From: Octopus sinensis
Taxonomy: Eukaryota
Assembly: GCF_006345805.1 (NCBI RefSeq)
Contig: NC_043000.1
Span: 16,740,001-16,804,000, forward strand
Length of the DNA: 64,000 nt
Direction of reading: 5' to 3'
Positions 188 through 31,819 of the stretch are shown here, in pieces. Both the position numbers and the translations under genes were made by a program. Every line of letters begins with the position of its first letter. The first letter of the stretch is position 1. Below the pieces are notes generated by a model. The model ran no database searches, was not told where the DNA came from, and saw nothing but the letters and a program-made list of their open reading frames with translations.

Positions 188-1675
188 GTCACCATCCTTA
201 ATGTCCAGTAACTGTCACATCTCACATGTGAATAAACTGCCTTCATCTTCTCCACATATGAATTAACTGCATATATAAAATATATTTGCCAACTAAATGT
301 GGTGGTCCTATAGAGGATGGTGCTACTGTTGTTTTTAGCCCCAGAAAGACATCTTCCCTAGCTGTCTGAAACATCATGTATCATTTTATCTATTTTATAA
401 ATGTAATATTCACTTCCCAGACATTTGTACATTAATGCATATGCTTTATACGCACTTTTGACAAGTTGTGGTGCACCTGAGCACTGTATACAATAATTTC
501 ATTATTATTATTATTATATTATAATATTTTTTCTAGTTGCAGTTGCAATCAAACAACAAAGGTCACAAGGTCAATTAGACCCAAAACATATATAATAGAA
601 ATAAGTATTATGAAGAGATATGAAATATTTGTCAAACGAAAATTGAGAATGTCACAAAAAAAAAAACAAACAAAAAAAAACCCCTCCACTTAAATTGGCT
701 GATTAACAGCCAAAAAACAACAGGCCACATGTTTTCTTTTAATGACTGGCATATTTTCCTTCCAAAACATTGACCGTGAAACTTATCAGTTTGCAATTTC
801 ATGATGATTAGAAAAATAATCTTAAATATCTTTTAATAATAAAATCCTTAATGAGTAAAACTTAACCATTTTGATACCACTCCACTTGTACCAGGCCTTA
901 AGTTTTATGATACAAAATTGTCAAGTTTTAAAAGTGTTTCTATTAAAATTGAAGCTTTCCAACATTTTTTATAAGAACATTTCATGTTCTAAATACCAGC
1001 TAATTAATGAAAAAGTTATTTATTTTATTTTATTAAGATCTCCAAATTCTTGAATATTTTCCAGTTTGAAATGCAAAAACTGTGTTTTTCATCAGAAATA
1101 TGCTAACAAAAAGGTTAATACTGTTCTCAAAATATTTTCACAGAAATATCTGTATAGTTTTGGTCTAAATGACTCTAAAACTTCTCTTGTTTAATTGCAA
1201 CCTCAACTGAGCATTAAAAATATAGCAATTTTATTTCAACAAGCACATTATACATTTATGAGCTCATAACTAAAAAAAGAAAGAAAGAAAAAAGACTCTT
1301 ATAAAAATAATTTTTTATCAATCAGACATGGCACTTAACTCCTTGTCTTTTATTTAGTTTAGGTATGAACATCTCAAGGATTATTGTTGCTTAGTTATAA
1401 AAGTATGCAGTCTGAGTTACAAAATGTCACAGTCACCTCAATGTGGAGACCTGGAATGTATGACCTTTAAGTAATCTGAGAATAACAACACAAATGGTAA
1501 CAGTAAGGTGGATCAGTGGTTAAAGTACCAGGCTACTAGTGCATTAATCCTGGGCTCAAATCTGTTACAAGTGTTTTGTCTTTCTGGGCACTTAACTCAG
1601 CTGTAGTCAGAAATAGGTACCTGGTTATTGGCAGGTGGTGATGGAGGAAACAATGCTATTTGTGATAGATTGTCG

Positions 1676-1897
1676 TCATGTAAAGAGTTCAGGCCACTTG
1701 AGGTCAAGGGAGACTTAAAACAAAGCGGTCGTTGGCATCTTCACCATCTCGTCTGGCAGCTTGTTCCACGAATCCGCAACCCGGATGGAGAAAGATCCTC
1801 TCCTTTGATTGAAATGAAATCGTCGCAGGTAGAGATTTTCGGAATGACCCCGCAGCCGACGCTCTGGTGCAGGAGTGAAGAACAGATCTTTCAAGAG
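1676..1897 (-). mobile_element. CR1-clade LINE ORF2 C-terminal fragment
   Basis: FFTPAPERRLRGHSENLYLRRFHFNQRRGSFSIRVADSWNKLP, the RGH...RV...WNxLP CR1 motif. Confidence 0.85.
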
Positions 1898-2255
1898 AAT
1901 GTGTCCCACCTGCTTGCTCTATGCAGTTCCAACTGTCATGGTATCAGGTTTATTTGAGGATATTAGCTTCCACAGAGAAATGTCTCACCCACAGGAAGAT
2001 TTCTTTCCTACTCGTTTGCTTCCCACTGTAAAACTGGCATTAAGCACTGAGCCTTTAAAACCATTTAGTAAGCATCTGTATATTTGATATCATATTTACA
2101 GACATGAAGTGAGCTGCAAACCAAAGCTGATAGGGTGTTGAATAATTCAAATCCTGGAAATGACACAACATTGAGCATGTGGCCAAAGCACAATTTTTGA
2201 AACAGATCAGTCCATTTAACTGCTTGTAAGATACTCCAGGATGGGAACATATGTT

Positions 2256-2487
2256 TATTTCTTTATTGCCCACAAGGGGCTAAATATAGAGGGGACAAAC
2301 AAGGACAGACAAAGGGATTAAGTCGATTATATCGACCCCAGTGTGTAACTGGTCCTAATTTTATTGACCCCGAAGTATGAAAGGCAAAGTCGACCTCAGC
2401 GGAATTTGAACTCAGAATGTAGCGGCAGATGGAATACCGCTAAGCATTTCGCCCGGCATGCTAACGTTTCTGCCAGTTTGCCGCCTT
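2256..2487 (-). mobile_element. tRNA-derived SINE family A, full copy; other copies at 3360-3700, 6150-6312, 13610-14030 and 21837-21957
   Basis: Head ggcggc(g)agctggcagaaacgttagc...gagttcaaattccgc, core gaggtcgactttgcctttcatcc, tail gtgggcaataaagaaata; ggaacatat repeated in both flanks. Confidence 0.8.
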
Positions 2488-3733
2488 TGGAACATATATT
2501 ACTTGTAAGCAGAAGTACTGTATAATCAACAAGTGTTTTATCAAGTCACAATGTTAGACTCAGTTTGTCCTGTAGGTAAAGTCACCAGCTGTTTGACTTA
2601 TCCCAAGATACAGTAGATGAAGACCTGAAGTGCTTCATGATGTTCCTATGACCCAGAGTGCAAGGTTACACTCCACACACAGGTAGTAAATACTCAGTCC
2701 AACAGACTTACAACCAGACCTTTAGTGTTACTGTTTTCCTTCCTCTATATTTTATTTCTACTCAGACTGCTGTTTGTGGACAATGTTATGGTGCAGTGGA
2801 GGTTGTCCTAAATACGGAGCTAGGAACTGGTTGGAGAAATTTCCTTTTCCGTATAGATACAGTAATGAGGATATATAGAGTGGTTTGTCTGTTGCCAACT
2901 TGTTACCGATATAGACATCATCAAGTGAAACGCTAAGGCATGGTGATAATAATGATGATGCTGGTCAATCATCATTGACATCTTCATCATATCACAATTA
3001 AATTAAGGCTTCATGCTTTGTTTATGAAACAGCAGAATACTTAGTTTTTCTTTGAAAATCCATTCTTAACAGACTAACCAATAATCTTAACAGACCAATC
3101 AATAATATTTAAAAATTGTAACAACACACATGAAATACAGTTTAACAACGCATACAACACATCAAGATAATATTGATTTCTAACATAGGCACAAGCCTCA
3201 ATTCTTTTTCTTTTTTTGGTGGGGTAGGGTGAGTATTGTGAATTAAGATCAACAACAGATGTTTATTTATTAATCCTGGGACATAGGCTTGGAAACAGGG
3301 GGTGCAGGGGTGTGTGCTTGCACTCCCTAAAATTTTGTGGGGCGCAATGAAAATGCTTTGAACATCCCAAGTTAGACTGGGGTTTGCACCCTCTAAGCAA
3401 ATTTTGTTCCAGTGCTTATGCCCAGAAGGATGAAAGGCAAGGTTGACCTTGGTGGGATGTGAACTTAGAACATAAAGTGGTGCATATTCAGGCATTTAAT
3501 CCACTCCGGCAATTAAAATAATATTGGTTTCAAATTTTAGCACAAGGCCAACAACTTTGGGGGAGGAGGTAAGTCGATTATATTGCTCCCAGTGCTCAAC
3601 TGGTACTTATTTTATCGACCCCTGTAAGGTAAAGTAACCTCGGCAGGATTTGAACTCAGAATGTAAAAGATGGACGAAATGCTGCTCTGCATGCTTAACA
3701 ATAAAATAAGAAAAACTTGAAAGAAGGACTTAC

Positions 3734-3958
3734 CCAAGAAATTTGACTCCAACAGGCCCCATCTCGAGAATGCGGCTAGCAAGTGCCTCACCTTCATTGA
3801 GGGGAGGCGGATGGCTTAATTTTTCTCTTTTAATCAGCTTGCAGGTTACTCTTGTGGGCATGTATGCTTTCCGAGGTGGAATGATGATACGTACTCCGGA
3901 GTGACGGCTACCCCGCATGGCCCCACCGCGTGCATCCACCATAAAACTGACCAGGAAA
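3734..3958 (-). CDS. Ank2: Ankyrin first ZU5 (spectrin-binding) exon ([30 protein letters not shown]...[21 protein letters not shown]), 225 nt, phase 2 to 2
   Basis: Hallmark [16 protein letters not shown] motif; acceptor ccacag|T, donor GG|GTAAGT. The next exon (PVIxExPHF) was not found in 1-3733, so the gene continues beyond the window. Confidence 0.97.
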
Positions 3959-4184
3959 CTGTGGACGGTGATGGTCATTTTTAGTTAAACAGTGAGGAAA
4001 CAGAACAAACAAAATATATGTGTGTGTGTGTGTGTGTATGGGTATATACACCTATGGATGAATATGTACTGCTAGGTATGGGTGTGTACTTCTCTAACCC
4101 TCAAACAGTATGTGCGTGAGAGAGAGAGAATGCAAGCAGTGGTGTACTGCTCCGAAAGACGAAAGAAAGCAGGAAAGAGGTTAC

Positions 4185-4226
4185 TGAAAGTTTCGAAAAG
4201 TTATACAGTCTGGTTCCATTCGGTTC
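4185..4226 (-). CDS. Candidate 42-nt cassette microexon (NRMEPDCITFRNF), phase 2 to 2
   Basis: ggtttttattcacag|G...CA|GTAACC; in frame between exon G and ZU5; contains an ATG and CpGs. Confidence 0.5.
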
Positions 4227-4813
4227 CTGTGAATAAAAACCTCCAATAAAACATGTAAAGAAAGGTTTTTCCACCACCAAGAAGATTATCGCCTTAGGAC
4301 TTTCATCAGCTATTTCAAGTAACACAGCAAATCCCAGTAAAAGAGTGAGTGAGAGGATGTGTGAATGAAAGAGAGAGAGAGAGAAGAGAAGAGGAAGCAT
4401 GTGTGTGTGTGTGTGTGTGTGTGTGTTTGAGGTGGGTGGGCTGTCTGCTGCTACTACACACAGTATAATACACCACCACCACCACCACAACCACTACCAT
4501 CATTAATACAGTGCATTTAGATTAGACTGCCTTTACTCCTCAACCTTCTCCTCCAGCCCTCCATCCCCCCCCCACATCACACTACCTTACCAACAACCCA
4601 GCAGACAGACCTGCGGCAGCCGCCCGCCCCCCCCGGTGGCGGTGGCGGTGAGATGTGAGGGTGGTGGTAGAGAGAGAGAGAGAGAGGGAGAGGGAGAGAG
4701 AGGGGAACCACCAAACCAACCACTCCTTTTTAACATGATGCCATTCTCAAGTTCTGGAGTAGAGATGAATCAATTGAAGTAACATTCTCTGAATTATTCC
4801 AGTATATATATAT

Positions 4814-4875
<62 letters not shown>

Positions 4876-5388
4876 TGTGTGTGTGTGTGTGTGTGTATTA
4901 TTGTATAGATGTCAAAGTTGGTTTGTGTTGGTGGTGGTAGATGCCCCAGGGTTGGCTAACATAAGGAAACTTTTCAACACATTGCTACTTCTGTTACTTA
5001 TTTTACATGCCACCCTTATAATAAATACCCTGCTAGAATTTTTATTATATAGAAGATCAGTAGGAGTAGTAGTAGTAGTATAAATAGCTGTAAGACTGCT
5101 ACTCTGATACAAAGTTTTCTAATCTTTTCCTCTTATTACTTCTTTGGAAGTCTCTTTTTCTGTACTCAATAAGGGTAGCAGGAATTTCTCCCCGCCCCCT
5201 AGGGCAGTGACTGTAGTAGGAGTCTCTCCCCCTAGAGCAGTAGCTGTAGTAGTAGGTTACCATGGAAAGCAGTGGCTGTCATAGTAGCAGTCTCTCCACA
5301 ATAGTAGCAGTCTTTCTATTACAGCAACAGCTGTAGTCTACCCACTGTAATAGTAGCTTTAATAGTCTATAGAGTACAGATAAAGTAG

Positions 5389-5772
5389 TGGAGGCGCAAT
5401 GGCCCAGTGGTTAGGGCAGCGGACTTGCGGTCATAGGATCGCGGTTTCGATTCCCAGGCTGGGCGTTGTGAGTGTTTATTGAGCGAAAACACCTAAAGCT
5501 CCACGAGGCTCCGGCAGGGGATGGTGGTGATCCCTGCTGTACTCTTTCACCACAACTTTCTCTCACTCTTACTTCCTGTTTCTGTTGTACCTTGTATTTC
5601 AAAGGGCCGGCCTTGTCACTCTCTGTGTCACGCTGAATATATCCCTGAGAACTGCGTTAAGGGTACACGTGTCTGTGGAGTGCTCAGCCACTTACACGTT
5701 AATATCACGAGCAAGCTGTTCCGTTGATTCAGATCAACCAGAACCCTTGTCGTCATAACTGACGGAGTGCTT
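5389..5772 (+). mobile_element. tRNA-derived SINE family C; related subtypes at 14244-14527 and 16859-17160
   Basis: ggaggcgcaatggcccagtggttagggcagcggac...ggtttcgattccc carries A-box and B-box motifs. Possibly one of the described octopus OK/OR tRNA-SINE families (not verified). Confidence 0.8.
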
Positions 5773-7568
5773 CCAATCCAACAGATAAAGTTACCTAAAG
5801 TTTGTTTCAAGCCTCCAGGTTCATAATGCTGGGGTTTATTTGGGATACTGAGAGTATGAGGCCACATCCTCTAAATGGGATGCCAAACCAATGCAGGGTT
5901 AAAATTCCAGCCTACCACTGGTTCTCATTTTTCAGTCAAGCGGACTGGAGCTACATGAAAAGAAACGCCCTGCTCAAGGACGCGATGCTGCCCAGCCTGG
6001 AAATTGAACTCCTGGCCATACAATCGCGAGTCCAACACTTTCACCACTAGGTCATGCGACTTTGCATTTAGCCTTCATTTTATACCATGACTTTAATAGT
6101 TATTCTCTACTCCATGTAAATATTTACTAATTTAAATACATATATATATATTTCTTTATTGCCCACAAGGGGCTAAACATAGAGGGGACAAACAAGGTCA
6201 GACAAAGGGATTAAGTCGATTACATCGACCCCAGTGCGAAACTGGTACTTTATCGATCCCCGAAAGGATGAAAGGCAAAGTCGACCTCGGTGGAATTTGA
6301 ACTCAGAACGTAACATATAAGGCTGGTATATAAGCAATGCACTTATAAGTATATATATCCATACTGCACAAATAATAGTATTATCTCCACTTCAGCATTA
6401 GCTGTAATAAGTACTATCATTTCTATAGCATTAGCCGGAACAGTTTGCACACACTACAGCTGTGGCTTTAAAAGGTTTCTGTTATAACAGTATAGGTAGC
6501 AGTGGTCTCTGGTATAGCAATAGTTGATAATACAGAGTAGAAGAGTTGGTAAGGGAAAGACAAGAAGAGGAAATGGCAATTCACACACAAATCAGAAGTG
6601 TGTGTGTGTGTGCTTGTGTGTGGTGGTAATGGTAGAGGTAGTAGTAGTGGTGGTGGTAATGGTAGAGGTAGTAGTAGTGGTGGTGGTTGCGGCAGTTGGT
6701 GTTTATGTAGGTAAGATTACACAGGTACTAGTGTGTTCCTGGGTGTTCATATAATGGCACACACACACAGAGTTACTTGTGTATGTATGTAACAAGATTA
6801 CCTACCATCAGTGTGTTTGTATGTGTGTGTGTGTGCAATTGTTTGTGTGTGTGTGCATGTATGTGAAAGAGAGAGGGAGAGAGAATATGAGAAGTGGAGG
6901 TTGTCATTTTTAGGTTGAATAATTCATTAATATAACTAAAACTAAACACCCCACGCCCCTCCTCCAAATCTGGGTCAACACTTTGGAGTGGGTGGAGGGG
7001 GAGGGGCATGCCGGTACTGGAACAAGAGAAACTATTCCTACCATAACAAATCCAACAGGGCAAATCAACCGGTGATTAAAAATGGCCCCATTCCCCACTT
7101 CAAGAGCATGGGGGTGGGTTAGTAGCAGAGGAGGAGGAAGAAGGTAACAGAGTCAGGATGTCAGTGGCAACAGGTGTGGATGGAGGTCTGCTGACATCCC
7201 CAATCCCAGAGGAGTGAAGGGTGGGGGGGGGTAAAGAAGGAAGGAAAGAAAAAAAATCAAGGAACAAAATCAACTTTAGATAGGGACAAATCACTCCTCA
7301 CACTCCCTCTCTGACCCCTAATTTGAGAGAGGGACCAGGGTGGGGGGAAGTCGTCAGTGTGAAGGGGAATCTGAGGTGAACAGTTCTGGGACAGTAAAAG
7401 TTACTTGCTTGATAGATTGGGGCAGGGCAAGAAGGCCCAGTTACAGCGCCCCCAACCCAATCCAATCCAATCCAACCTCACCCCTATGTCACTACAGCTA
7501 CATGGATATCAAGATGGGTCTGGGTGAAGTAGAGAGAGAGATAGCATTGCTGTACTTGAGAATTCTAC

Positions 7569-7595
7569 CTTGGCAGCAGTGGAGCTATGTGGTGG
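7569..7595 (-). CDS. Candidate 27-nt microexon (HHIAPLLP), phase 2 to 2
   Basis: (CT)n...cctcttcacag|C...AG|GTAGAA; frame-preserving. Confidence 0.35.
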
Positions 7596-7616
7596 CTGTG
7601 AAGAGGTGTGTGTGTG

Positions 7617-7679
<63 letters not shown>

Positions 7680-7763
7680 GTAAAAGTCAACCATTCTAAG
7701 CTGCCACACCACATAAGGGGGAAGGTGTGTTGCGCCTGATGAAAACTGACAATAGAAGGTTAC

Positions 7764-7787
7764 CCCCCTAGTAGTGGTGATGGTTCC
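7764..7787 (-). CDS. Candidate 24-nt microexon (EPSPLLG), phase 2 to 2
   Basis: tctattgatttcctag|G...GG|GTAACC; frame-preserving. Confidence 0.4.
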
Positions 7788-8320
7788 CTAGGAAATCAAT
7801 AGAGTAGACTAGGGAAAAATATAGAATATCAGGGAAGAGTAACTGAAGTATTGTTTACTATTGTTATATATTACATACATACATACACACATACTAATAT
7901 AAAGAATCAAAATGACAGTGTTTATATACACATTTATATATATATACGCAGAGAAATCACAAATAGTTATATATTCCCACCCATTGCCAACCTTTCATAT
8001 CTCAAACCACCATGAATGACTATACAAACTTAATTAAGTATTTGGTGTCTGTAATTTATTTAATGAATTTCAGTAGAGTGGAAATTTAATGAGTGTCAGT
8101 TTGAAAAAGGCAATTAAATTATATTGGCATACCCCCACACACACATACAAATTAAGTGAAAAGAGTATCATAATTATTAAGTACAAACATACAAGCATAT
8201 AGTAGAATGGTATTTATAAATATATGACGTCACATAGATACATAAACATTTATAAATGTATATTTCTCACTGTATAAGAATGAGATTATAAACAAAGCAC
8301 ATTATAATAAAACTATATTT

Positions 8321-8719
8321 CTCTTTCACTTATTTCAGTCATTTGACTGCGGCCATGCTGGAGCACCGCCTTTAATCGAGCAAATCGACCCCAGGACTTA
8401 TTCTTTTGTAAGCCCAGTACTTAGTCTATCGGTCTCTTTTGCTGAACTGCTAAGTAACGGGGACATAAACACACCAGCATCGGTTGTCAAGCAATGCTAG
8501 GGGGACAAACACAGACACACAAACACACACACGCATACTCATATATACATATATACGACAGGCTTCTTTCAGTTTCCATCTACCAAATCCACTCACAAGG
8601 CTTTGGTCGGCCCGAGGCTATAGTAGAAGCCACTTGCCCAAGGTGCCACGCAGTGGGACTGAACCCGGAACCATGTGGTTGGTAAACAAGCTACTTACCA
8701 CACAGCCACTCCTGTGCCT
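8321..8719 (-). mobile_element. tRNA-derived SINE family B, full copy
   Basis: Head ggcacaggagtggctgtgtggtaag...ggttccgggttcagtccc (A/B-box-like), internal (TA)(TG) tract, tail ggtgctccagcatggccgcagtcaaatgactgaaa. Confidence 0.8.
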
Positions 8720-9473
8720 ACATAATGCACATATACAGATGTATACATACATATTGTACATATATGTGTGAGCACATATCATAGATGTGTGTGTACATTA
8801 ATATATATTTACTTATTATTCTTATACAAGAATGTTGTTGACAGTAACTTTGAAGTTTCAGCCAGCTGAGCCATCATTGGACTGGTCAAATCATCAAAGT
8901 AACTGTCAATAACATTCTTGTGTAAGGATAATAAATCTGTACTCTTACAAGAGTATAGAGTAACCCACCAAATTAGTAACAAATTGTTTTTATTATAACT
9001 GAGCATAAAAACAAACATTTATATATATGTGTGTGTGAAATAAGAGTTTGATTCAGTTCCACATGGCTTCAAGTTTAGTGGGTGCCTATTGTATGTCCCA
9101 TCTCCGAGGATTTAAGGAGCTGAAACAAACTGTTATTTAACACATGTACTCCAAGCAAATCTGTTGAGTGCTGCTTTCTTTTGTTCATATATACAGGGTG
9201 CGATGGGTAAATTGTTGCCACTTTACATTTTTAATTTCGTGCATGTGCATTGTTTGTTTTTGATTTTATTGACTACACAGTATAGTAGAGTCAGTTGGGC
9301 ACCGTCTGTGACAAAAACAGCACCATTGTGCAATTCACTCTGCCAGAAATTTGGAAACGACATGCTGTACTGCTTGGCATTCACACCAGGGTCGAGTTGC
9401 TCGACTAAAGGTGGTGCTCCAGCATGGCCGCAGTCAAATGACTGAAACAAGTAAAAGAGTAAAGAGTATATAT

Positions 9474-9504
<31 letters not shown>

Positions 9505-9879
9505 CACACATACATATATATATATGGGGAAAAAGAGTTTAAAATATGAATAATGTTAATACTAGACTATAAAAATGTGTTGTAATATTAAAATTCTCTT
9601 CTCGCAGCACACTAAAATCATTCGTAATTTGATGCTCTGTTGAATTGAAATCACAAGTCAAAGGGTTGACTTGGAGCTAGACAACAACAATTAGATTCTT
9701 AGAATTATACAATGTGCATAATGCTATCATAAAGATGACTACTGTTCTCTCATTGGGTTCCATGCCTATAGAAGCAAAATAATTATTTGTTAAGAATCCC
9801 AGGAGGATCATTTATTACCTCTACTGACAACAAAGAGCTTTTTTCTCTTGCAATGAAGAGCAAATTATATAATGCTTGT

Positions 9880-10235
9880 GTACAAAGTGTGATGTTACAT
9901 GGACATTGAATCTGGAGCATGTGTGAAAGTTGGAAAGAAATGGTGCAAGCATGCTGGATGTGCACGAGAGAAAACTGTGCCAGTATGGACATGTTATGTA
10001 TATGATGGATGGTGGGTAAAGAAAAAAAATAATAAATGCCAAGTGATTCAAGTGGATGGAACTTGCAGAAGAGGAAAACCAAGGTAGACATGGGAAGAAC
10101 TGATGAAAACTTAACTCAAGAGTTTGAACCTCATAAAGGAGATGACAAACAATGATCACAAGTTGTAAGACACTCTGATGGGGAACACCTGTCCAACCCA
10201 TGCTAGCATGGAAAAAAATGAATGTAAAAGTGATG
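9880..10235 (+). mobile_element. RTE-clade LINE 3' fragment (decayed)
   Basis: Encodes GTCRRGKPR*TWEELMK...LNL..EMT, an RTE C-terminal motif; ends catgctagcatggaaa...gatga. Confidence 0.65.
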
Positions 10236-13200
10236 AGTATTCTTTACTTTATTGAAACCAATTGCAAATTATTGTATCTATTTTGATACTTTATTGAAGT
10301 GAGCTTTACCAGGGAGCTGAACAACCCCCAGTTTTCCAAAAGAACACTGTTTAATAATGACATGTGTGCACCCAGTACACTCAGTAAAGTGGCTGGTGAA
10401 TGAATGGAGTGTGTTAGATAAACACAAACTATGCAATCTGTAATATCTAGAGCAGTTGACCTGCTAAAAATAGCAGCCAAATCTAAAAAAAGATTAGATA
10501 AAGCAGTCATGGATACCCTCCAAAAAGACAGAAAGGTTACAACTGATATGCCTTTGATCTACTATCTGCTCTGTCATGTGACAGTTATAAATGAGCATCA
10601 CCATCATACAAATGGGGCCATTCATTTCCTATCTGCTAGGAAAATATGTCTGGTCATAGGGAAATATTATCTTAGAAACAAGATGAAGTGTGGGTGACAG
10701 GAAGAGCATGTCAGCTGTAGAAAATCTGCTTCAATGAATTGTCTGACCATGCTAGCATGGAAAATAGGCATTAAAATAATGACGAATCCCTAGACATACA
10801 CACATGTAGGGTGTAACTTCAAGGATACATAACACGAGTTTCTAGACACTTAAGATTACATATATCTTTAGTAACTCAGACAGAAATATTCAATGTGATT
10901 TCAAGAAAATACACACAAAACCTAGAACAGTATATTTCTGCTGAAATACAGGAATGAAACCATTCCCCCATCTCCTTATCCAGTGAACATTTGCATAGTG
11001 AGGTAAGCAGATATATGATAGTTCCCAACTGTAAACATTCCTATTGTACATCCTGATAATGTAGTATATAGGGCTTGCTTTAAAGGTCAAAACATACTCT
11101 ATTCAGTTAAATAGCTATATATCTTGGTAAAAGAGAATTTGACAATAACATTTAAAGACACCTCTTGACCCACTGTTGTGCTGCCTCTCTCATCATGTTA
11201 TATATAGTTTGAGAGCACTTTAGCTTTTCATGACCAGAATACTTACAACAACAGTATCAAATTAATAACATGGTGGAGAATTTCCTTCTTACTCCTTAGT
11301 TACCGAGCCCAACCGTAGTAGCCCAATATATTTAATTTAGCATGATGATTTATTTAAATGTATCTCTGAATTAATTTGATATTATTATTAACTTAATCCG
11401 ACAATATCCAGTGTTTTTAGTACTTAATGCCCAACTGAAAAATTAGGAAAACAAACTATAGAGTATAAACTGCTGAATGGCTCTTTAAGGGACAGAGAAA
11501 GATTTGAAAGAGGAAAATAGCAACAGAATTTCAAGGTCAGAAATGAACTTAGCAACAACCACAAATACTAAAAACTAAATCTGTTATTAACAATGAAACC
11601 AGAAGCCAGGTTATTTGGATCCACCTAAGCCACGTTCTTAGCAATAATACCTGTAATTTTTCTCCCTTTTCATTAAGCTTTCTAAGGTACAATAAGAGTT
11701 TTCAAGCAGAATATGAAAACCTGGTGAGTGAGGGGTGTAGCGAGGCTCAAGCAAACCTCTAACTATAGATTAGTAAACATTTCAAACAATTTACTCTGTG
11801 GAATTTGTGAATTCCCCTTCCTACTGCTTTAAGCACCAAGACAAAAATAGTTTCATTGACACACCAGAATTCTTCAGCAGGTGAGTTGCAGCTTCAGTGC
11901 AATGATATAGCACCGGCAGACACCCCCACACATAAACACAGGTTTTATAATGTAGCAAAAGGCAAGACTACTATTCTAGTTACGCTTGCCAAATGCTATT
12001 GAAACAACAACTTGAATTAAAAACTAAATTTCAGGATTCTCAACACAACATTAATGAAAACTAATCATACATACTTTACCAAATTTGGAAGACAGTTTAC
12101 AAGCAATGTCTTTGTATGACTCTTAGGGAAGAAGAGATGTTAAAAAATGCCGGTGGGTTTACATGACCTTGATTTGTGACAAGACTAGGAATGATATCAA
12201 TATTTCTCTCAATCTAACCTTTTCAATACAACAGACAAGATAGCCTCCAACAAACTCCCTGATAAGGGCCACAAATAATCCTTAGGATGAGACACCCTAA
12301 AATTAAGGCAAAGATGACCCAGTAATTTGGTTTTTATATTTCAGAAATTTAAAATAAAAATTATAAATATGCTGCATCATTTCCATATATGTTGGAGAGA
12401 GAGCATCAAATTTAGACATTTGTATGAGGTCTGAAAAAGAAGCAAAGCTTCCAGCTAATTTCACCGAAACATACAAAATGAAGTGTCTTGCTTCATAAAA
12501 CCCTAATTGAGAAATAGTGACCTCTCAATGTTTCATGTAACTTCTCATGTAAATGTCAAAATTTGTACTTCAGTTGAGAAGAACAGTTGTTGAATCTTTT
12601 GAAATACCAAACATAATAATAGTATTAATTTTAAGCTCCCCCCCAGATAATCTTGGACTGAAATTCCAAGATCTCATTGTAAGGTATCTATCTCACCACG
12701 GAATAATAAGCAAACTATGTTGTCAAGAGAAAAACTGATGAACTAACGCCAACCAAGATTCTTTGGTGAAGTTGATTCAAGAGAGATAAGATGAACATAA
12801 ATAGTACAGCCAATCTACAGAAAGCACACAAGAATTTTGGTTTTCCTGCCATTTTCTACTTTCTTTCATAAAGAAAAAAGTAAAGAAAAAAAAAAGAAAA
12901 ACAAAACAAAAACAAACCTATTTATACTTGAGATTAAGTGAATTATTTAGAACTATCCAAAGAACATTTTGGAACAAAGAAACAGTTCTTTGGTGTCAGA
13001 GAACAAATTAAAAAACAAAAAAAGAACAAAGCACACACAAAAAAAAGAAACACAAATGAATAAAAAAACAAAGGTTTAGAACCATTCTAGATATGGTCGT
13101 ACATGAATGAAGTCATTTGTAGATAGACTTTAGGTTTGTCTGAGATAACATGTTTTGAGAGAGAGAGAGAAGAAAACAAGGTGTGTTTTGTGTTGCAATG

Positions 13201-13368
13201 ATGTAATGATGAACAAACTAAGGTTGAACATTTAAAACAATAAAAGGCTGCAAAATGTGAGACAATGTCTGAAAATAACATAATTATATATATAGAGCAC
13301 AGGCTACAAACACAGACTGCAGGAATATGGGGAGTAAGAAGCACACGTGAAAGGGGTCAATATTTTAC

Positions 13369-13401
13369 TGGTCGCTTTGATGTGAGCAGGATGGCACACA
13401 G
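13369..13401 (-). CDS. Candidate 33-nt microexon (CVPSCSHQSD), phase 2 to 2
   Basis: tttgttgttgcttctctccag|C...CA|GTAAAA; frame-preserving. Confidence 0.4.
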
Positions 13402-13441
13402 CTGGAGAGAAGCAACAACAAAGCTGCATTATATATATATA

Positions 13442-13490
<49 letters not shown>

Positions 13491-14835
13491 ATGTGCAATC
13501 ACACACTGCTACTACTACTATTACTACTAAAATCACACAACTACTACATATACTACTGGAGGAGTTAAGAAGGAAGAAGACATTTTAATATTTCAAAGAA
13601 CAGTTTCTTATTTAGCTACAAGGCCAACAATTTTGAGGGCAGGCTTAGTTGTCCACAATGATCTCAGTATCTACTGGCACTCTATTTTATTGATCCCAGA
13701 GAGATGAATGACAAAGTGACCTTCATGGTGGTTTAGAACTCAGAATGTAGATAACTAGAACAAAAACCACAGGGCAAATTTGGTCCATTGCTCTAATGGT
13801 TCTGTCAGACAGGGGATTAGCTAAGTCCTTAGTGTTGGGGATTGAAAAAAAAAAAATCTTGTGGCATATATTTCAGGCTTTTTAAAAAATTCTGAATTCA
13901 AATCTTGCCAAGATCAACTTTTCCTTTCATTCCTCCAGGATTGATAAAATAAAATACCAGTCCACTCAAGTTCAATGTAATTGGCCAAACCCTTCTTCAC
14001 CCCCACCCAATTGTTGGCTTGTGCCTAAAGTAGAAAATATCTCAAAGCATTAAGTGTATCCTGAAGAGCATCACACAGGCACCTCTTAACTCTTCCCATG
14101 GCATAGACACTGAAACATGCCTGTGCACCACAAACACGTATTTTGCCAAGTAAAAATCTGAATACACGGTAAGTGAACCTTAAATCACAAGCATTCTCTA
14201 AAACACCAACGCACGAATCAACTGCACCTTTATTTATCTTATGATCGTGAGGTTGTGAGCTCGAATCCCGGACCGGGCTGCGTGTTGTGTTCTTGAGCAA
14301 GGCACTTTATTTCACGTTGCTCCAGTTCACTCAGCTGTAGAAATGAGTTGCCAAGCTGTATCGGCCGTTGTCTTTCCCTTGGATAACACTGGTGATGTGG
14401 AGAGGGAAGGCTGGTATGCATGGGCGACTGCTGGTCTTCCATAAACAACCTCGCCCGGACTTGTGTCTAGGAGGGTAACTTTCTAGGTGCAATCCCATTG
14501 TCTGTGTCGTGACCGAAGGGGGTCTCCGATAGACACCTGTCCTATGTATTCACCTTATATAACCATCTCAACTGCAGAAAGCAGTTTTCTTTTTTGTACC
14601 AATCTACTTTTTGTTGAGGTATGTTAAGTTTGAAACTATTTTTCAATGAGATGTATCAAGTTTATTGAGGCAACATAACTTGCAGAAAAAATACCAATTC
14701 TATTTTTTGGTAGATTTTTAACATCATTATTGGAACATCTATGAAATTTAATTACAGTTACAGGGTTAATTTCTAGTGTTGAAGACTTTGTACAAATCCT
14801 CCTTTCCCAGAACTACATACTTCTGGATCATACCT

Positions 14836-14868
<33 letters not shown>

Positions 14869-16276
14869 ATGTGAAGGGGCAGGGCCTAGTGGTTACAGTG
14901 TTGCACCCACAATCTAGTGATCATGAGTTCGATTCCTAGACCAGGTGAGCAAAACACTTCATTTCACATTGCTCCAGTCCACTTGACTGTAAATAAGTAA
15001 ACTTGCAATGGAATAGCCTTCTGATCAAAGGGGAAAGTCAGCTTGCTTACCTACCCAGCAGGGTGGCATCATTTGAAAACTAAAACAATGCAAAGTGCAT
15101 TGTGATCAGTGATGTATAACTACATCTCATAGTCTGGTTGATATCATGATGATACTGTGACATGCATATATATTTGTAAATTTGAGCAAATGCTTTTACT
15201 TTATTCAGTTATTCTGAATTTCCTAGTCTTGGACAGCATTACCAGGTTATGTGTATTAACCTCTTCTGTGTAAGACCATCAAATAACTAGGATGTTGAAA
15301 CACACACAGAGCAAAATTCATTGATATAAATGTCCTACAACTCAAATGGCTGTTGGAGGCTTTACTGAAGTTTAAATGCTTTTAGATTCTATTAAATTAT
15401 TAGATTCTATTCTTGACAGCTTAACTTACTGGCCCGGTCAGTCAGACCCATTTTGAAGCTGATTCATTTGGAGTGTTAGCCTTTCTTGGTAAGTTGCAAT
15501 TGCTTTCAGTTCTTCATCACAGAAGCAATACCTTCCCAAATGTATGCTATAATGGTAGCATAGATAAAAACTTCTAGAGGGCATCAACAGGACAAAACCA
15601 ACGGAGTCAGTAGGTTCTATAACTAATTCAAAAATATTATTTCTACTCTAAAGACAGGCCTTTTTACAAGAGAAAAGAGAACAAACGTGTTATTAAATTC
15701 TGTAAAATATAATGAATAATTGCCATACAATTATATATATAGTCTTCTGGAGATTGAATTAGTCTCTTTTTATACTAATATATGAGGCCAGTAAATTGTC
15801 TGAGTTATCTTAAAGGATGTTTATTGGCTATAGGTGAAATCATAAATCCAAAACAGAATAGTTCCAACTGGAAGCTGAAACTACCAATTGACTGTCTAAT
15901 TGTTCTTTCAAATCAAATTACTCTAAGTAAAACTGACTTGCGAAAAGCTTTTACAACCAGTCTACAACATTTGCAGTGCAACATTCAAAGTATCCCTTTT
16001 TGAACCAGTGTTTCAGTGCAGATGAGATAAATAGATAAGAGGCAAACCTTCCATAGATAGAACATTAGTTTCTTACTAATGAACCTCTCCCAGAGAAACC
16101 TTAGTAACCTATTCCTTGTAGTGAAGTGAATTAAAGTTATGTAGAATGATGTGTCAGCAAAACAACCATCTACAACAGTATTATAATGTGTTAGTTACCT
16201 ACAACTACTTCCAGTGACCCATATACAACACCACTGACACCAAACATGCAATCAGCCTTTGCTTCCTTTCGCTCAC

Positions 16277-16312
16277 ACAATGTTATTTATTATGGCAGCT
16301 ACTTGTAGCAGG
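16277..16312 (-). CDS. Candidate 36-nt microexon (LLQVAAIINNI), phase 2 to 2
   Basis: ttttgatgcacgcttgcag|C...GT|GTGAGC; TGCATG at 16245-16250 downstream. Confidence 0.45.
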
Positions 16313-17285
16313 CTGCAAGCGTGCATCAAAACATGTAAACATTATCAGGAAGGAAGGTTGAGCAATAAAAACAAACAACATGGAAAAACTTTAATTAAGT
16401 TAAGGACAAACACAGAGAAAATAAAGATGTATAAGAAGGTGAAAGTTAGTTTAAGAGTTACCTTTTCCATTTTAGTTTGCTATGGTTGAAAAAACAGAAG
16501 ATCAACTTCAGAAACAGGGTTAAAATAAATTTCAGGAGAGTGGGATGGGAGATCAGAAAATTGGTGCAGAATTCAGGGTGAAAAGGTTACAGGGGTGTCA
16601 AACATTGTCAAAATAGGGTTAATTACTTAAATGAATACACTAAATTATACCGAAAAATATACTGAAATATTTTGATCAAATTTTCTTAATTTTTATTTGA
16701 TGCATATTGTGTATGTGTGCATGTGAGTGTTAGTGTGCAGCTGGCATTAGTTTGGGTGATTCCTGTGAGTGTACTCACATGTTTGTGTTTTACCTGTACC
16801 TAACTTCTGAAAGACTCCATACGATTTCAGGTATGTATGGGTAAAAATATTAAATTAGTGGAGGCACATGGCCTAGTGGTTAGAGCAGCGGACTCGCGGT
16901 CGAGGGATCATGGTTCGAATCTCAGACTGGGCAATCTGTGTGTTTATGAGCGAAACACCTAAGCTCCACGCGGCTCCAGCAGAAGGTAACGGTGAACTTC
17001 TGCTGACTCTTTTGCCACAACTTTCTCTCACTCTTTCCTCCTGCATCTTGCAGCTCACCTGTGACGGACCGGTGTCCCATCCAGGTGGGGAACCTATACG
17101 CCAAGGAAACCGGGAAACCGGCCCTTATGAGCCAGGCATGGCTAGAGAAGGAACAAACAATATTAGATTAAATGCTGTGATAATGGGAAAACCCCCATTT
17201 TAATTCCTACTAACGACTTTTTACTTTTGGTTACTGAGCAACTTTTCACAGCTACCTCTTCAAAGAGTTTCAAGCTTGTTGATTA

Positions 17286-17319
<34 letters not shown>

Positions 17320-18103
17320 GATGATGATGGGTACTGTGGTTTGATATGAATTTGCTGGTGAACCATATCCATACCCAAATTATGATTGTCAATTGAAACC
17401 ATATTCAGTTGGTTTCTAATACACTTAAAAAAAGGCATGAATGTTACAACCTTCCATTTTATTTCATATATGTATATAAAACTTGAGAAAATATGCCTTT
17501 TTTTTTTTTATTAAACTTTATGTTCTCACATTAATTAGCTTGTGTTGTGACACTGAAGATTCTACACAACAAGACGTCATGTAGAACAAATGAAAGTGCC
17601 CAGTACAATCCACAGAATAAACAACACCTGTGTAATTAATTTGGCAGTGTTAATTCTGAAACCGGATTTTCAAATGTAAGAGTTTATTTAGTAACACTTC
17701 AACTGCACCAAAATCAACAACTACAGGCTATTAATTGTAACAACAGCGGTAAAACAGACATTCAAACCAAAACTGTCAAAAATGCAAGAGAATAACAGCC
17801 AATAGCAAATGCTGGCAGATTTAACAGCATTTTAAGAGTTCATCAGGTTATTGGCACAAGAAGAAAAGCAGATTTAGGTATTGAGTTAATAACACAAAAA
17901 ATACACAAGGGTTTGATGAAAGAAAATGGAAAACCCTGTCACAAAAATCATGGTTGCTACAGCAATGAAAATTTAGTTAAAAGTTCTGCATTCTTAAGCA
18001 TTGTTTAATGAAATTCAAGGCAAAACTTTGTTTGTGTGTATGTGTGAGTGAGTGAGTTTTTTTTTTTTTTTTCTTTTCAGAAGTAGGAAGTCTGTAAACT
18101 AAC

Positions 18104-18279
18104 CCTGAGTAAGTTGGGGTGCGGTCAACAGCCACGTTATCGGGGTCAAAACTTGTGTTGAAGGAAGAGCCACTGTACGAACTATAACGAGAACTCTCCA
18201 TTGTGTTGTTCAGATAACGGTTGTCAGGATGACTAGCATATGTATGACTAATAATCTGGTGTTCAAGGTAGTCTTGTTG
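18104..18279 (-). CDS. Ank2: Ankyrin linker exon G (QQDYLEHQ...SFDPDNVAVDRTPTYSG), 176 nt, phase 0 to 2
   Basis: Acceptor ttctttattccttgcag|CAA, donor GG|GTTAGT. DNVAV...P.YSG matches the conserved pre-ZU5 DNVAL...PIHSG segment and joins the ZU5 exon in frame. Confidence 0.92.
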
Positions 18280-29970: not shown

Positions 29971-31549
29971 ATCTGTTTATTACTGCACACGCACAGAAGC
30001 AAACAAAGAACCAAAGCAATAGGTTAGTGTTAGTGACTATTCCTCTACTGATGTGTATGTGAGTACATACATATCAAACCTGTATACATATCCATACCAG
30101 AAGGTTTATGTAGTAAAAGAATGGAAGAAGTATAAAACACAACCAAACACCCATATTTCTTCTTCAACTTTTATGTTAAATCTTTAGTAACAATCCCATA
30201 TAAAAAAAAGGTGACAGAACAGCAATGTAGAAAATTTAAAGCAAGATGGCAGAAACCCAAGAGAGAGAGAGAGTGAAAAGAGCAAAAAGCAACTTCAGGA
30301 CAGAAGAGTGCTCCTAAATGACTTTCTCGGACATGTTGTAAATTATATCTCTTCCATTTGAGACTTGGATTTGCTTTCACTTCTGACAAAGGTTGGAATG
30401 TTATGACTCTTCCCCCACACCACTGAATTTGAAACTTCACATCTAAACAAGAAATTAATATTGCTAGAGATGAAGTGACAGAAATACAAGAGCATAGTGT
30501 TTTCACTCACACTGCTTTTTATTCTAAGTTTTATAAAATACATACCTAGTCATGTGTTGGGGGTCAATGCAATCAACTTAAATTCCTCCCACACAATTTT
30601 ATAGTCTTGTGACAGTAAAAAAAAACATTGCTATCATCATCACAAAACTAAGACTGAGTAAATAAATATATAAGCTTAAGATTTTCTGACAAACTATTGA
30701 ACAATTTAGAATTCATGACCTATTTTCTGGTCTGTAGCCATGAACAGCAGAGATTCACCACTAGAAATGGCACTCAGCTGTGTTCAGTCTTTCTTAGCTT
30801 TTAGGAGATGCTTGGGCTGACCTTTCAGACCACCGTTTTTGTGCATAAAGAAGAAAGGGCCAATCTCTTTGAGAATACATACATATATGATGATGATATA
30901 TTACACACATTTCTTGTTATCTGCTATGATTTGGTTATTCTTTCAAGAATTTATCATGGCTCAGTCTTTAGTGTGAAAGAAGGATCAGGAGACTCCTTCT
31001 TCAAGAGTTAAAGAATCTAGACAGAAACAATTTCATTATTGTGCCAACACAAGTATTGGCAACCTTTATCTGGTTGCATAGATTTTAGTCCCCCATAATC
31101 AATACACCCTTAATTTAAATTTTGTTATATACATATATAATGAATTAGCCTTGAATTAAATTCCAAAATACTCATAATATAAGAGTATTTTTTCACAAAT
31201 GTTCATTCTTGTCAAACTAATTACCCAGTGATAAAACATATTTACCTATCATGATCTTCCATTTTCTTTTTAATGATTGTAGAGTGTGGTACTTGCTAAT
31301 TTTAGCAAATTGAGTGAGTACAACTGCCACTGAAGTACCTAGAATAATTTTCCCCTGGGTTGAGATTCAGTAAATCTGGAGCAAAAGATTTATGCATTGC
31401 ACCTGGTCATTTGAGTGATTAGCTATGCACAATAGGAACTGACCCACTGACGATGATAATCATTTACAACAAGTTCGAGAAAAAGAGAAAAGCCTATTTG
31501 AAGCAATATCTACAGATGATTACCCTCTGTTCAACCCAATTAAGTTTAC

Positions 31550-31819
31550 CTGTAAAGATGACGAATCTATGTCATCAACATAGCTCAGATTTTCATCATC
31601 AATGTAGCTGCCCAAAGAAGTAGGAGGTCGTGAGGACACGTTCCTCGCGTATGCCAGTTCGGCTTGTTGTGGGTATGGAGAATGTCTACCCAGAATGGAT
31701 TCTCTATCGAAAGCAGAATCTTTATCACATGTTGACAAACGGTCCCTTTCGAGGGATGGGGATAGTTGGTCTAGGGTTGAGAATCCATTAGCAATGACAC
31801 TGTCGTGACCCTGCTGGTG
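31550..31819 (-). CDS. Ank2: Ankyrin linker exon E (HQQGHDSVIANGFSTLDQLSPSLERD...YVDDIDSSSLQ), 261-270 nt, phase 0 to 0
   Basis: Tandem in-frame acceptors give exon starts at 31819, 31813 or 31810; donor CAG|GTAAAC; GC/CpG-rich open frame. Confidence 0.85.

What the first reader, a model, noticed from the sequence alone, without database searches (positions are those of the whole stretch)
3958..18104. Array of five frame-preserving microexon candidates at the entrance to the spectrin-binding ZU5 domain
This 14-kb phase-2 intron holds five AG...GT units with pyrimidine tracts, lengths 36, 33, 24, 27 and 42 nt. All are multiples of 3 and stop-free in the frame that links YSG to FLVSF. From recall, human ANK2 has an alternative 12-aa insert (RASPCLERDNSS) at exactly this junction. 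A combinatorial or mutually exclusive microexon bank here could tune spectrin binding by cell type. Some candidates will be chance matches, but five in the required phase, some with UGC or TGCATG signals, is suggestive.
Basis: partly seen in the sequence, partly recalled or inferred. Interest (0 to 1): 0.72.

Follow-up and report, generated by a model that had tools for sequence, protein, structure and literature searches.

The report
One conserved ankyrin microexon, not five

Summary
The gene is on the minus strand. The phase-2 intron, 14,145 nt at 18103..3959, is as described. It lies between an exon ending ...DNVAVDRTPTYS-GG and the 225-nt first ZU5 exon.

The five AG...GT units are not more than chance. 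The intron holds 604 frame-preserving, stop-free units of 3-60 nt. It holds 250 of 21-45 nt, against 228 +/- 17 in shuffles. None of 21 nt or more has a counterpart in seven orthologous intron pieces.

It is an 18-nt exon at 16479..16462 (-): ag|CAAACTAAAATGGAAAAG|gt. It inserts KLKWKS between ...YSG and FLVSF. The same unit sits in this intron in five other unnamed mollusc-like loci. Exon plus splice sites are 84% identical between loci and the flanks 28-30%. The changes are synonymous or fall on residue 1 or 3.

The hexapeptide also appears in intron-less relatives ([KR][LF]xW[KR]T). One spliced ankyrin mRNA contig carries it as PMKWKS.

Vertebrate AnkG and AnkB insert a 33-nt mini-exon at exactly this junction, and it weakens spectrin binding. 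By analogy the 18-nt exon probably tunes ZU5-spectrin binding. Alternative use and the direction of the effect are untested.

The parts
18104..18279 (-). Upstream coding exon ('G'), 176 nt. It ends ...DPDNVAVDRTPTYS + GG (phase 2), with donor CAGG|gttagt. Its last ~15 codons are the conserved 'extension' that forms strand beta0 in front of ZU5-N in vertebrate ankyrins.
   Evidence: sequence and frame; orthologous ORFs P0121, P0122, P0124 and P0125 end ...DNV..D[RK][TS]P.YSG; it aligns to AnkB DNVALSSSPIHSG; role of the extension.
3959..18103 (-). Phase-2 intron, 14,145 nt, GT...AG. About 16% of it is repeated elsewhere in the window, and it has several microsatellites.
   Evidence: No Rfam family above threshold and no tRNA.
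16462..16479 (-). Conserved 18-nt microexon CAAACTAAAATGGAAAAG. When spliced in, the protein reads ...TYS-G-K-L-K-W-K-S-FLVSF, a net insertion of KLKWKS.
   Evidence: best combined splice score of all 604 in-frame units; the same unit is in this intron in L004, L002, L013, L014 and L017; 4-9e-5 expected per intron for the five loci tested; 84% identity for exon plus splice sites against 28-30% for flanks; the same hexapeptide occurs in intron-less or spliced relatives.
16480..16507 (-). 3' splice region of the microexon: ...gttgatcttctgttttttcaaccatag. It has 16 of 20 pyrimidines. Only one AG (at -28) lies within 148 nt upstream.
16456..16461 (-). 5' splice site of the microexon, AAG|gtaact. 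Reading through gives an immediate stop (AGG TAA).
   Evidence: The 11-mer TGGAAAAGGTA is the only non-low-complexity 11-mer shared by the window intron and at least 3 other species.
16245..16250 (-). TGCATG, an Rbfox-type motif, 212 nt downstream of the microexon. This is a weak lead only.
   Evidence: GCATG lies within 300 nt downstream in 3 of the 5 loci examined (window +213, L014 +82, L004 +85). My estimate of the chance of this is about 0.04, uncorrected.
3734..3958 (-). First ZU5 exon, 225 nt: T + [12 protein letters not shown]...VGVKFLG, donor gtaagt. It has the same length and phase as mouse Ank3 exon 31.
   Evidence: Pfam ZU5, E = 1.9e-21. (mouse exon table).
3974..3978 (-). ATGAC, branch-point-like, 16-20 nt upstream of the ZU5 acceptor, which has a poor pyrimidine tract. 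Conserved in 6 of 8 loci.
   Evidence: alignment A6; ORFs starting MT[IV]....
16277..16312 (-). Probable reader candidate, 36 nt (GLLQVAAIINNIV). It has TGC motifs upstream and TGCATG downstream. Chance unit.
   Evidence: scores 1.2 / 0.5. No counterpart in any orthologous intron.
13369..13401 (-). Probable reader candidate, 33 nt (GCVPSCSHQSDH), just downstream of a (TA)n microsatellite. Chance unit.
7764..7787 (-). Probable reader candidate, 24 nt (GEPSPLLGG). Chance unit.
7569..7595 (-). Probable reader candidate, 27 nt (GHHIAPLLPS). Its 'pyrimidine tract' is the (GA)n microsatellite 7620-7676 read on the minus strand. Chance unit.
4185..4226 (-). Probable reader candidate, 42 nt (GNRMEPDCITFRNFH). 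The alternative is 15532..15573. Chance unit.

Best explanation
The intron between the 'extension' exon and the first ZU5 exon of this ankyrin gene contains a single genuine cassette microexon of 18 nt (window 16479..16462, minus strand). It does not contain a bank of five.

When the microexon is spliced in, it keeps the frame. It inserts six residues, K-L-K-W-K-S, between ...TPTYSG and FLVSF. In vertebrate ankyrins, ...TPTYSG corresponds to the segment that folds as strand beta0 onto ZU5-N. FLVSF is strand beta1, which contacts beta-spectrin.

Shown here:
- The unit exists with canonical AG/GT.
- It is the only conserved island of the intron across six unnamed, mollusc-like loci.
- Its substitution pattern is that of coding sequence.
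- The same hexapeptide, x-[LFM]-x-W-[KR]-[ST], is encoded at the same place in intron-less relatives and in one spliced mRNA contig.

Inferred:
- It is alternatively spliced, most likely enriched in neurons (about 0.6).
- Lengthening the beta0-beta1 connection changes how the extension clamps ZU5-N, and so changes the affinity for beta-spectrin. This follows the vertebrate 33-nt Ank3 exon 34 / Ank2 mini-exon at the identical junction, which weakens binding. An effect on spectrin binding has a probability of about 0.5. The direction of the effect is open.

The alternating pattern K-L-K-W-K fits an amphipathic beta-strand with a Leu/Trp face and a Lys face.
For: Anatomy.

Chance level of the five units.

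The 18-nt unit has the best combined splice score of 604 in-frame units. It is the only in-frame unit among the 10 that score at least 2 on both sites.

Orthologous units in the same intron:
- L004 CAAGCTTAAATGGAAAAG (KLKWK)
- L014 CAAACTAAAATGGAAAAG (KLKWK, identical in nucleotides to the window)
- L013 CAAACTTGTGTGGAAAAG (KLVWK)
- L002 CAAGCTCCATTGGAAGAG (KLHWK)
- L017 CCAACTGAAGTGGAAAAG (QLKWK)
. All changes are synonymous or fall on residue 1 or 3.

Statistics:
- For the five loci tested, the expected number per intron is 4-9e-5, and 0-1 of 2000 shuffles give a match.
- Exon plus splice sites are 84% identical and the flanks 28-30%.
- The exon donor carries the only shared non-trivial 11-mer.
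- No other unit is shared between any two species.

Same hexapeptide at the same junction in other proteins:
- P0010 and P0033 KLKWKT, P0062 RLKWKT, P0071 RLKWRT, P0082 RFKWKT, P0123 KLGWRS.
- L018 RLQWKT.
- The spliced mRNA contig L019 reads ...VHSG-PMKWKS-FLVSF and continues across the KFLG|P exon boundary.

Vertebrate parallel:
- PDB AnkB and AnkG sequences align with a 6-residue gap exactly opposite KLKWKS.
- The junction between extension and ZU5-N is the insertion site of the AnkG/AnkB mini-exon. The extension raises spectrin affinity 10- to 20-fold, and the insert lowers binding.
- Mouse Ank3 has the same 225-nt phase-2 ZU5 exon, preceded by a 33-nt neural exon.
Against: - There are no RNA data for this organism, so inclusion and alternative use here are not shown.
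- The closest relative found (ENA ERZ21867824, loci L003 and L001) shows no such unit in the 3.9 kb after exon G or the 9.6 kb before ZU5. The two contigs do not overlap, so a gap remains.
- Two compact relatives (L012, L015/L016) have short introns here and no microexon.
- In several relatives the hexapeptide is fixed inside a larger exon. That shows the insert-bearing form is a working ankyrin, and it argues against a simple 'off switch' for spectrin binding.
- Regulatory motifs are weak. UGC lies within 60 nt upstream in only 2 of the 5 loci examined, and not in the window. GCATG lies downstream in 3 of those 5.
- There is no sequence similarity to the vertebrate 11-aa insert (...QYDSR), so homology with it is not shown.
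- The structure prediction of an insert-bearing relative failed (pLDDT 47).
- The organisms behind all related loci are unnamed.
Confidence: 0.8

Rival explanations
1. One reading: five frame-preserving microexons (36, 33, 24, 27, 42 nt) form a combinatorial or mutually exclusive bank that tunes spectrin binding by cell type.
For: Units of these lengths with AG/GT and an open frame exist. One, the 36-nt unit at 16312..16277, has TGC motifs upstream and TGCATG downstream. The junction is a proven splice-insertion site in vertebrates.
Against: The counts are at or below chance. None of these units has a counterpart in the other intron pieces compared, and no second unit is shared between any two species. 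Their splice scores are mediocre. Two owe their 'pyrimidine tract' or position to microsatellites. Their lengths and sequences are unrelated, unlike known mutually exclusive arrays.
Confidence: 0.03
2. The 18-nt exon is real but constitutive in this lineage. It is always included, so there is no splicing switch and the hexapeptide is simply part of the protein.
For: In several relatives the hexapeptide is fixed inside a larger exon or ORF (P0010, P0062, P0071, L018). The one spliced mRNA contig found carries it (L019). Its splice sites are reasonably good.
Against: Skipping keeps the frame and restores the junction ...SG|FLVSF, which vertebrates, a rotifer, a beetle and compact relatives use as their only form. 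The vertebrate exon at the same site is a regulated cassette.
Confidence: 0.3
3. The hexapeptide does not weaken spectrin binding. Instead it adds a basic-aromatic patch (three Lys, one Trp) next to strand beta1. That patch could strengthen electrostatic contact with spectrin, or bind another partner or the membrane.
For: K-L-K-W-K alternates polar and hydrophobic residues, as in an amphipathic strand (from the sequence). Trp, the hydrophobic residue at position 2 and the basic residue at position 5 are the conserved positions in all loci and proteins except P0041 (PMWRER). The vertebrate insert is polar and acidic and is unrelated in sequence. Fixed inclusion in some lineages shows that the insert-bearing form works.
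Against: There are no binding data. The only experimental precedent at this junction is loss of binding. No usable model was obtained.
Confidence: 0.3
4. The 18-nt island is a conserved non-coding element or a chance match, not an exon.
For: No transcript data exist for this species.
Against: AG and GT lie at exactly the same boundaries in six loci. Changes are synonymous or confined to residue 1 or 3. The flanks are at random identity. The same peptide is in frame in intron-less genes and in a spliced mRNA. The expected number is 4-9e-5 per intron.
Confidence: 0.01

Closest known systems
Vertebrate Ank3 exon 34 (exon 30 in the numbering of Yamankurt et al. 2015) and the equivalent Ank2 mini-exon: a 33-nt, 11-aa cassette regulated by Rbfox/Elavl3 and by neuronal activity
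   Same: It inserts at the identical point and in the same phase: between the conserved extension (...SG) and F of FLVSF, directly before the 225-nt first ZU5 exon. It is a frame-preserving cassette in the same intron of the same gene family.
   Different: It is 33 nt against 18 nt here. Its peptide ends ...QYDSR and has no similarity to KLKWKS. Its regulation and its effect on spectrin binding are shown in mouse and untested here. Common descent is neither shown nor excluded.
Invertebrate ankyrins with the hexapeptide fixed in the reading frame (unnamed contigs P0010, P0033, P0062, P0071, P0082, L018)
   Same: They carry the same motif, [KR]-[LF]-x-W-[KR]-T, immediately before FLVSF and after a DN[VI]...RP... 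extension.
   Different: In these it lies inside one uninterrupted ORF, so it is not a separate exon. Their ZU5 sequence type (TCRYLR...) differs from the window's (TCKLIK...). The organisms are unnamed. The closest named sequences are arthropod, but those named ones (Tenebrio, Orchesella, Hyalella) either show the direct junction or start at FLVSF.
Ank3 microexon E35a (27 nt, between UPA and the death domain)
   Same: It is a deeply conserved, frame-preserving microexon in an ankyrin gene that changes a protein-interaction surface.
   Different: It sits in a different place in the protein and has different partners (the InsP3R / Na,K-ATPase complex). Its conservation has been described only within vertebrates.
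Neuronal microexons dependent on the eMIC domain of Srrm234 / SRRM4
   Same: The exon is very short, frame-preserving and lies in a neuronal cytoskeletal scaffold gene. The window has a fairly long AG-poor stretch upstream, and a conserved branch-point-like motif sits in the downstream intron.
   Different: The hallmark UGC close to the 3' splice site is absent in the window and present in only 2 of the 5 loci examined. Neural specificity could not be tested.

Membership tests
Ankyrin gene, junction between linker and ZU5-N | ZU5 domain that starts FLVSF.VDARGG | tested here: met
   Pfam PF00791, E = 1.9e-21, profile positions 1-70 of 97. PDB AnkG, AnkB and AnkR match with E = 1e-29 to 1e-33.
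Ankyrin gene, junction between linker and ZU5-N | Conserved ~15-residue extension (DNV...P..SG) directly before ZU5-N, with a phase-2 intron at the junction and a 225-nt first ZU5 exon | tested here: met
   DNVAVDRTPTYSG aligns to AnkB DNVALSSSPIHSG. Phase 2. Exon 3958..3734 is 225 nt, as is mouse Ank3 exon 31. The end of ANK repeat 24 is at 63563..63393.
Cassette microexon | At most ~30 nt, a multiple of 3, open in the frame of the flanking exons, with canonical AG...GT | tested here: met
   18 nt, ag|...|gt, reads G-KLKWK-S in frame.
Cassette microexon | Exon conserved between species while the surrounding intron is not, with a coding-type substitution pattern | tested here: met
   Six loci. 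Identity is 84% for the exon against 28-30% for flanks across the five loci measured. Changes are synonymous or fall on residue 1 or 3.
Cassette microexon | Present in mature mRNA | tested here: inconclusive
   Not testable for this species. A spliced ankyrin mRNA contig from a related unnamed animal (L019) carries PMKWKS at the junction. The transcript-derived P0123 carries KLGWRS.
Cassette microexon | Both included and skipped forms exist in the same organism | not testable with these tools
   No RNA-seq or isoform sets were available. The direct-junction and insert-bearing proteins found come from different genes or species.
Vertebrate Ank3 exon 34 / Ank2 mini-exon | Insertion exactly between the extension (beta0) and ZU5-N beta1 | tested here: met
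   The 6-residue gap lies between ...SG and FLVSF in alignments to 6m3q and 6m3p. The insertion site is described.
Vertebrate Ank3 exon 34 / Ank2 mini-exon | Sequence homology of the exon (33 nt, peptide ending ...QYDSR) | tested here: not met
   18 nt against 33 nt, and KLKWKS against ...QYDSR. There is no similarity.
Vertebrate Ank3 exon 34 / Ank2 mini-exon | Inclusion lowers beta-spectrin binding; regulated by Rbfox/Elavl or neuronal activity | not testable with these tools
   There is only a weak motif lead: GCATG within 300 nt downstream in 3 of the 5 loci examined.
eMIC (Srrm234)-dependent neuronal microexon | UGC close to the 3' splice site, a long AG exclusion zone, a long UC-rich tract, and a strong downstream branch point | tested here: inconclusive
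   The nearest UGC in the window is at -89. UGC lies within 60 nt in L004 and L002 only. The window has one AG within 148 nt upstream. ATGAC is conserved before the ZU5 acceptor.
   Counts are at chance. No second shared unit was found in any pair of species. The five lengths and peptides are unrelated.

The most novel reading that the evidence does not exclude
The junction between the beta0 extension and ZU5-N may have been a splice-controlled switch of ankyrin-spectrin coupling since before molluscs and arthropods diverged. Under this reading, the 18-nt x-L-x-W-K exon is the old form. It was kept as a separate, probably neuronal, cassette in molluscs. It became fixed into a larger exon in intron-poor lineages, or in one of two paralogues. 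In vertebrates it was replaced, or independently re-invented, by the 33-nt exon at the same site.
Probability: 0.25. Interest if true: 0.6.

Novelty: new member of a known kind. Interest (0 to 1): 0.42.

Why it matters
In mammals, a mini-exon at exactly this junction decides how tightly ankyrin-G holds beta-IV spectrin. Through that it affects assembly and plasticity of the axon initial segment.

Here a different, shorter exon sits at the same point. It is conserved at the nucleotide level between animals whose introns no longer align. It is mirrored as a fixed hexapeptide in other invertebrate ankyrins. Together these suggest that this spot is a long-standing or repeatedly used control point of the membrane skeleton.

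It gives a precise and easily tested target in a cephalopod-like nervous system: an 18-nt size difference by RT-PCR and a six-residue difference in a binding assay. It also shows that counting in-phase AG...GT units in a long intron has no predictive value without comparison between species.

The exon may already be present in public gene models. I could not check that. My literature searches found no description of it.

Tried and rejected
- I scored splice sites with generic position weight matrices written from memory. This has limited power: the real ZU5 acceptor scores -1.5. I used it only for ranking.
- Blastn of the whole intron against the orthologous loci aligned only the exons. I therefore compared candidate units at the peptide level and by shared k-mers.
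- I searched the closest relative (L001/L003) for the microexon with progressively looser patterns and found nothing. The two contigs do not overlap.
- The third homologue search, with a junction profile, returned mostly ZU5-exon ORFs and no named insert-bearing protein.
- The listing of cluster members gave no organism names for the insert-bearing clusters.
- AlphaFold2 on an insert-bearing relative (P0152, 43-row alignment) gave pLDDT 47, so I drew no structural conclusion. I did not use the second job.
- Rfam and tRNA scans of the intron found nothing above threshold.
- Literature searches for 'KLKWK' and 'RASPCLERDNSS' returned nothing relevant.
- The first metagenome pattern scan found nothing. 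The looser second scan found L018 and L019.
- The organism of the window could not be named: the only exact match is an unnamed Logan contig.

Full report
**1. What is at the coordinates**

The gene lies on the minus strand. An exon at 18279..18104 reads ...SSFNTSFDPDNVAVDRTPTYS and ends with GG of a glycine codon, followed by gttagt. At 3958 an exon begins, ccacag|T TTC CTG GTC AGT TTT ATG GTG GAT GCA. It reads [12 protein letters not shown]...VGVKFLG up to 3734, followed by gtaagt.

This second exon matches Pfam ZU5 from profile position 1, with E = 1.9e-21. It also matches the solved ankyrin-G, -B and -R structures with E = 1e-29 to 1e-33. It is 225 nt and phase 2, the same as mouse Ank3 exon 31.

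Further upstream, the end of ANK repeat 24 is at 63563..63393. The window thus covers about 60 kb of the linker region of an ankyrin gene. I could not name the organism: the only exact match is an unnamed Logan contig.

**2. The five units**

The intron has 2,828 AG...GT pairs of 3-60 nt. Of these, 604 are multiples of three and stop-free in the linking frame. That includes 26, 31, 32, 35 and 21 units at the five stated lengths.

| Units of 21-45 nt | Observed | Shuffles | Antisense strand |
|---|---|---|---|
| All in-frame, stop-free | 250 | 228 +/- 17 | 384 |
| At least 12 of 20 pyrimidines upstream | 63 | 84 +/- 9 | 59 |
| At least 14 of 20 pyrimidines upstream | 28 | 24 +/- 6 | 21 |

Well-scoring units are no more often in frame than all units: 8 of 35 against 21%.

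- 16312..16277 (36 nt)
- 13401..13369 (33 nt)
- 7787..7764 (24 nt)
- 7595..7569 (27 nt)
- 4226..4185 (42 nt)

The 27-nt unit takes its 'pyrimidine tract' from a (GA)n microsatellite. The 33-nt unit sits next to a (TA)n array.

**3. What stands out instead**

Among all 604 in-frame units, the best combined splice score belongs to an 18-nt unit at 16479..16462...gatcttctgttttttcaaccatag|CAAACTAAAATGGAAAAG|gtaactct.

The first protein search had already returned relatives that read KLKWKT, RLKWKT, RLKWRT or RFKWKT directly before FLVSF. Others had the direct junction.

**4. Comparison between species**

I fetched genomic loci through ORFs of the two flanking exons. The introns do not align at all; only the exons do. 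The same 18-nt unit, with AG and GT at the same boundaries and in the same phase, lies in this intron in five other loci:

| Locus | Source | Sequence | Peptide | Position |
|---|---|---|---|---|
| L004 | Logan SRR26493809 | CAAGCTTAAATGGAAAAG | KLKWK | in a complete 4.4-kb intron |
| L014 | JGI 3300022205 | CAAACTAAAATGGAAAAG | KLKWK | identical in nucleotides to the window |
| L013 | ENA ERZ26859072 | CAAACTTGTGTGGAAAAG | KLVWK | |
| L002 | ENA ERZ25069580 | CAAGCTCCATTGGAAGAG | KLHWK | |
| L017 | JGI 3300027398 | CCAACTGAAGTGGAAAAG | QLKWK | |

Every difference is synonymous or falls on residue 1 or 3. Across the window and the first four of these loci, exon plus splice sites are 84% identical on average and the 60-nt flanks 28-30% (alignments A1 and A5). 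For those same five loci the expected number of AG-x-K-L-x-W-K-xx-GT per intron is 4-9e-5, and 0 or 1 of 2000 shuffles produce one.

The only non-trivial 11-mer shared by the window intron and at least three other species is TGGAAAAGGTA, at this exon's donor. No window unit of 21 nt or more has a same-length counterpart of at least 60% identity in any other intron piece. No unit other than x-L-x-W-K is shared between any two species.

**5. Limits of the comparison**

- The nearest relative (ENA ERZ21867824; ZU5 exon 99% identical in protein and 84% in DNA) shows no such unit in the 3.9 kb after exon G (L003) or the 9.6 kb before ZU5 (L001). The two contigs do not overlap, so part of that intron is missing.
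- L010/L011 do not reach exon G within 10 kb.
- L012 and L015/L016 are compact genes with a short intron here and no microexon.
- All related loci are unnamed. I call them mollusc-like only because they share the exon-G motif SYSGSSFNT.FDPDNV and the ZU5 type VTCKL.

**6. Evidence of use in mRNA**

A pattern scan of JGI contigs found L019, a 6.4-kb contig with these features:
- a 5' untranslated region and a start codon;
- the ANK repeats, with one frameshift near position 2600;
- an uninterrupted 1,281-codon frame through ZU5-ZU5-UPA-DD.

L019 crosses the KFLG|P boundary, where every genomic locus has an intron, so it is a spliced transcript. It reads ...[35 protein letters not shown]. The transcript-derived P0123 reads ...VAIG-KLGWRS-FLVSF. 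L018 and the P0010, P0062 and P0071 groups carry the hexapeptide inside long uninterrupted ORFs.

The motif is x-[LFM]-x-W-[KR]-[ST]; one transcript-derived protein, P0041, reads PMWRER and does not fit it. A rotifer fragment, a beetle protein and vertebrate ankyrins have the direct junction.

**7. What is known about this junction**

- Li et al. (bioRxiv 10.1101/2020.03.04.976142) showed that the 15 residues before ZU5-N form an extra strand, beta0. It pairs with beta1, places two hydrophobic residues in the ZU5 core, and raises beta-spectrin affinity more than 10- to 20-fold.
- The same paper states that the junction of extension and ZU5-N is exactly where a mini-exon of 11 residues is spliced into AnkG and AnkB under Rbfox or Elavl3 control. 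That insert lowers binding to beta2- and beta4-spectrin.
- The exon is Ank3 exon 34, 33 nt. It is embryonic and activity-induced. Forced inclusion weakens the AnkG-beta-IV spectrin interaction and spreads the axon initial segment.
- It is the 'exon 30' of Yamankurt et al., which is found in neural ESTs.
- Its 3' end...CAGTATGACTCAAG|GTTTC, gives ...QYDSR-F and has no similarity to KLKWKS.

The alignment of the window peptide to AnkB (6m3q) puts a 6-residue gap exactly between ...HSG and FLVSF.

**8. Mechanism**

Shown: there is a conserved, frame-preserving 18-nt exon at the junction between beta0 and beta1.

Inferred:
- It is a regulated cassette, about 0.6. Skipping restores the junction used by many animals, and exons this short are usually regulated.
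- It affects spectrin binding, about 0.5. Six extra residues lengthen the tight beta0-beta1 turn and change how the extension clamps ZU5-N, and so change spectrin affinity.

The direction is uncertain. The vertebrate precedent is weakening. But the peptide is an alternating K-L-K-W-K pattern, typical of an amphipathic strand with a Lys face, and it lies next to the strand that touches spectrin. It is also fixed in some lineages, so it cannot simply abolish function.

Regulatory motifs are weak. In the five loci examined, GCATG lies within 300 nt downstream in 3, and UGC close to the 3' splice site in 2 and not in the window. The structure prediction gave no usable model (pLDDT 47).

**9. Verdict**

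The intron and its phase are right, and in-phase units exist but at chance level.
The junction is indeed a microexon site, but there is one exon, not five, and it is not one of those listed.
- What is there is a new member of a known kind: a cassette at the ankyrin extension|ZU5-N junction.
- My searches found no description of it. I could not check public gene models, which may already include it.

Noticed in passing
window 3974..3978 (-); L001, L004, L010, L013, L014 at the same distance: ATGAC lies 16-20 nt upstream of the ZU5 acceptor and is conserved in 6 of 8 loci. Those acceptors have a poor pyrimidine tract. L002 and L012 have an ordinary pyrimidine tract instead. It is probably a fixed branch point and may matter for how the upstream microexon is handled.
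   Followed up: partly
L019 (JGI Ga0170475_109650401) 599..6405: This is a near full-length spliced ankyrin mRNA from an unnamed animal, with one frameshift near 2560-2677. It carries PMKWKS at the junction. It is useful as a reference for exon mapping.
   Followed up: partly
window 5381-5771, 16851-17043, 28716-29139: These are copies of one interspersed repeat family. They carry similar short ORFs such as MFIERKHLKLHEAPAG... About 16% of the intron is repeated elsewhere in the window.
   Followed up: no
window 7620-7676 and 13430-13490: (GA)n and (TA)n microsatellites. On the minus strand the first gives a long false pyrimidine tract in front of two candidate units (7595..7569 and 7519..7502).
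   Followed up: yes
window 63393..63563 (-) and 31520..31849 (-): The first is the end of ANK repeat 24 (GQTALSIAQRLGYISVVDTLK...SDSEDEG). The second is a Ser-rich open frame that may be a linker exon. The linker region of this gene spans about 60 kb, so other small exons could be hidden in it.
   Followed up: partly
window 27298-27819: A long low-complexity AT-rich array that reads as poly-Ile, poly-Leu or poly-Tyr ORFs, in the intron upstream of exon G.
   Followed up: no
L012 (ERZ24986310) and L015/L016 (ERZ21784934): These are compact ankyrin genes. Their extension exons (...SDNVMHEKRQIGSSG and ...YDPDNVALSRQPIFQG) lie only about 0.15-1 kb from ZU5 and have no microexon. This is either lineage loss or a second paralogue.
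   Followed up: partly
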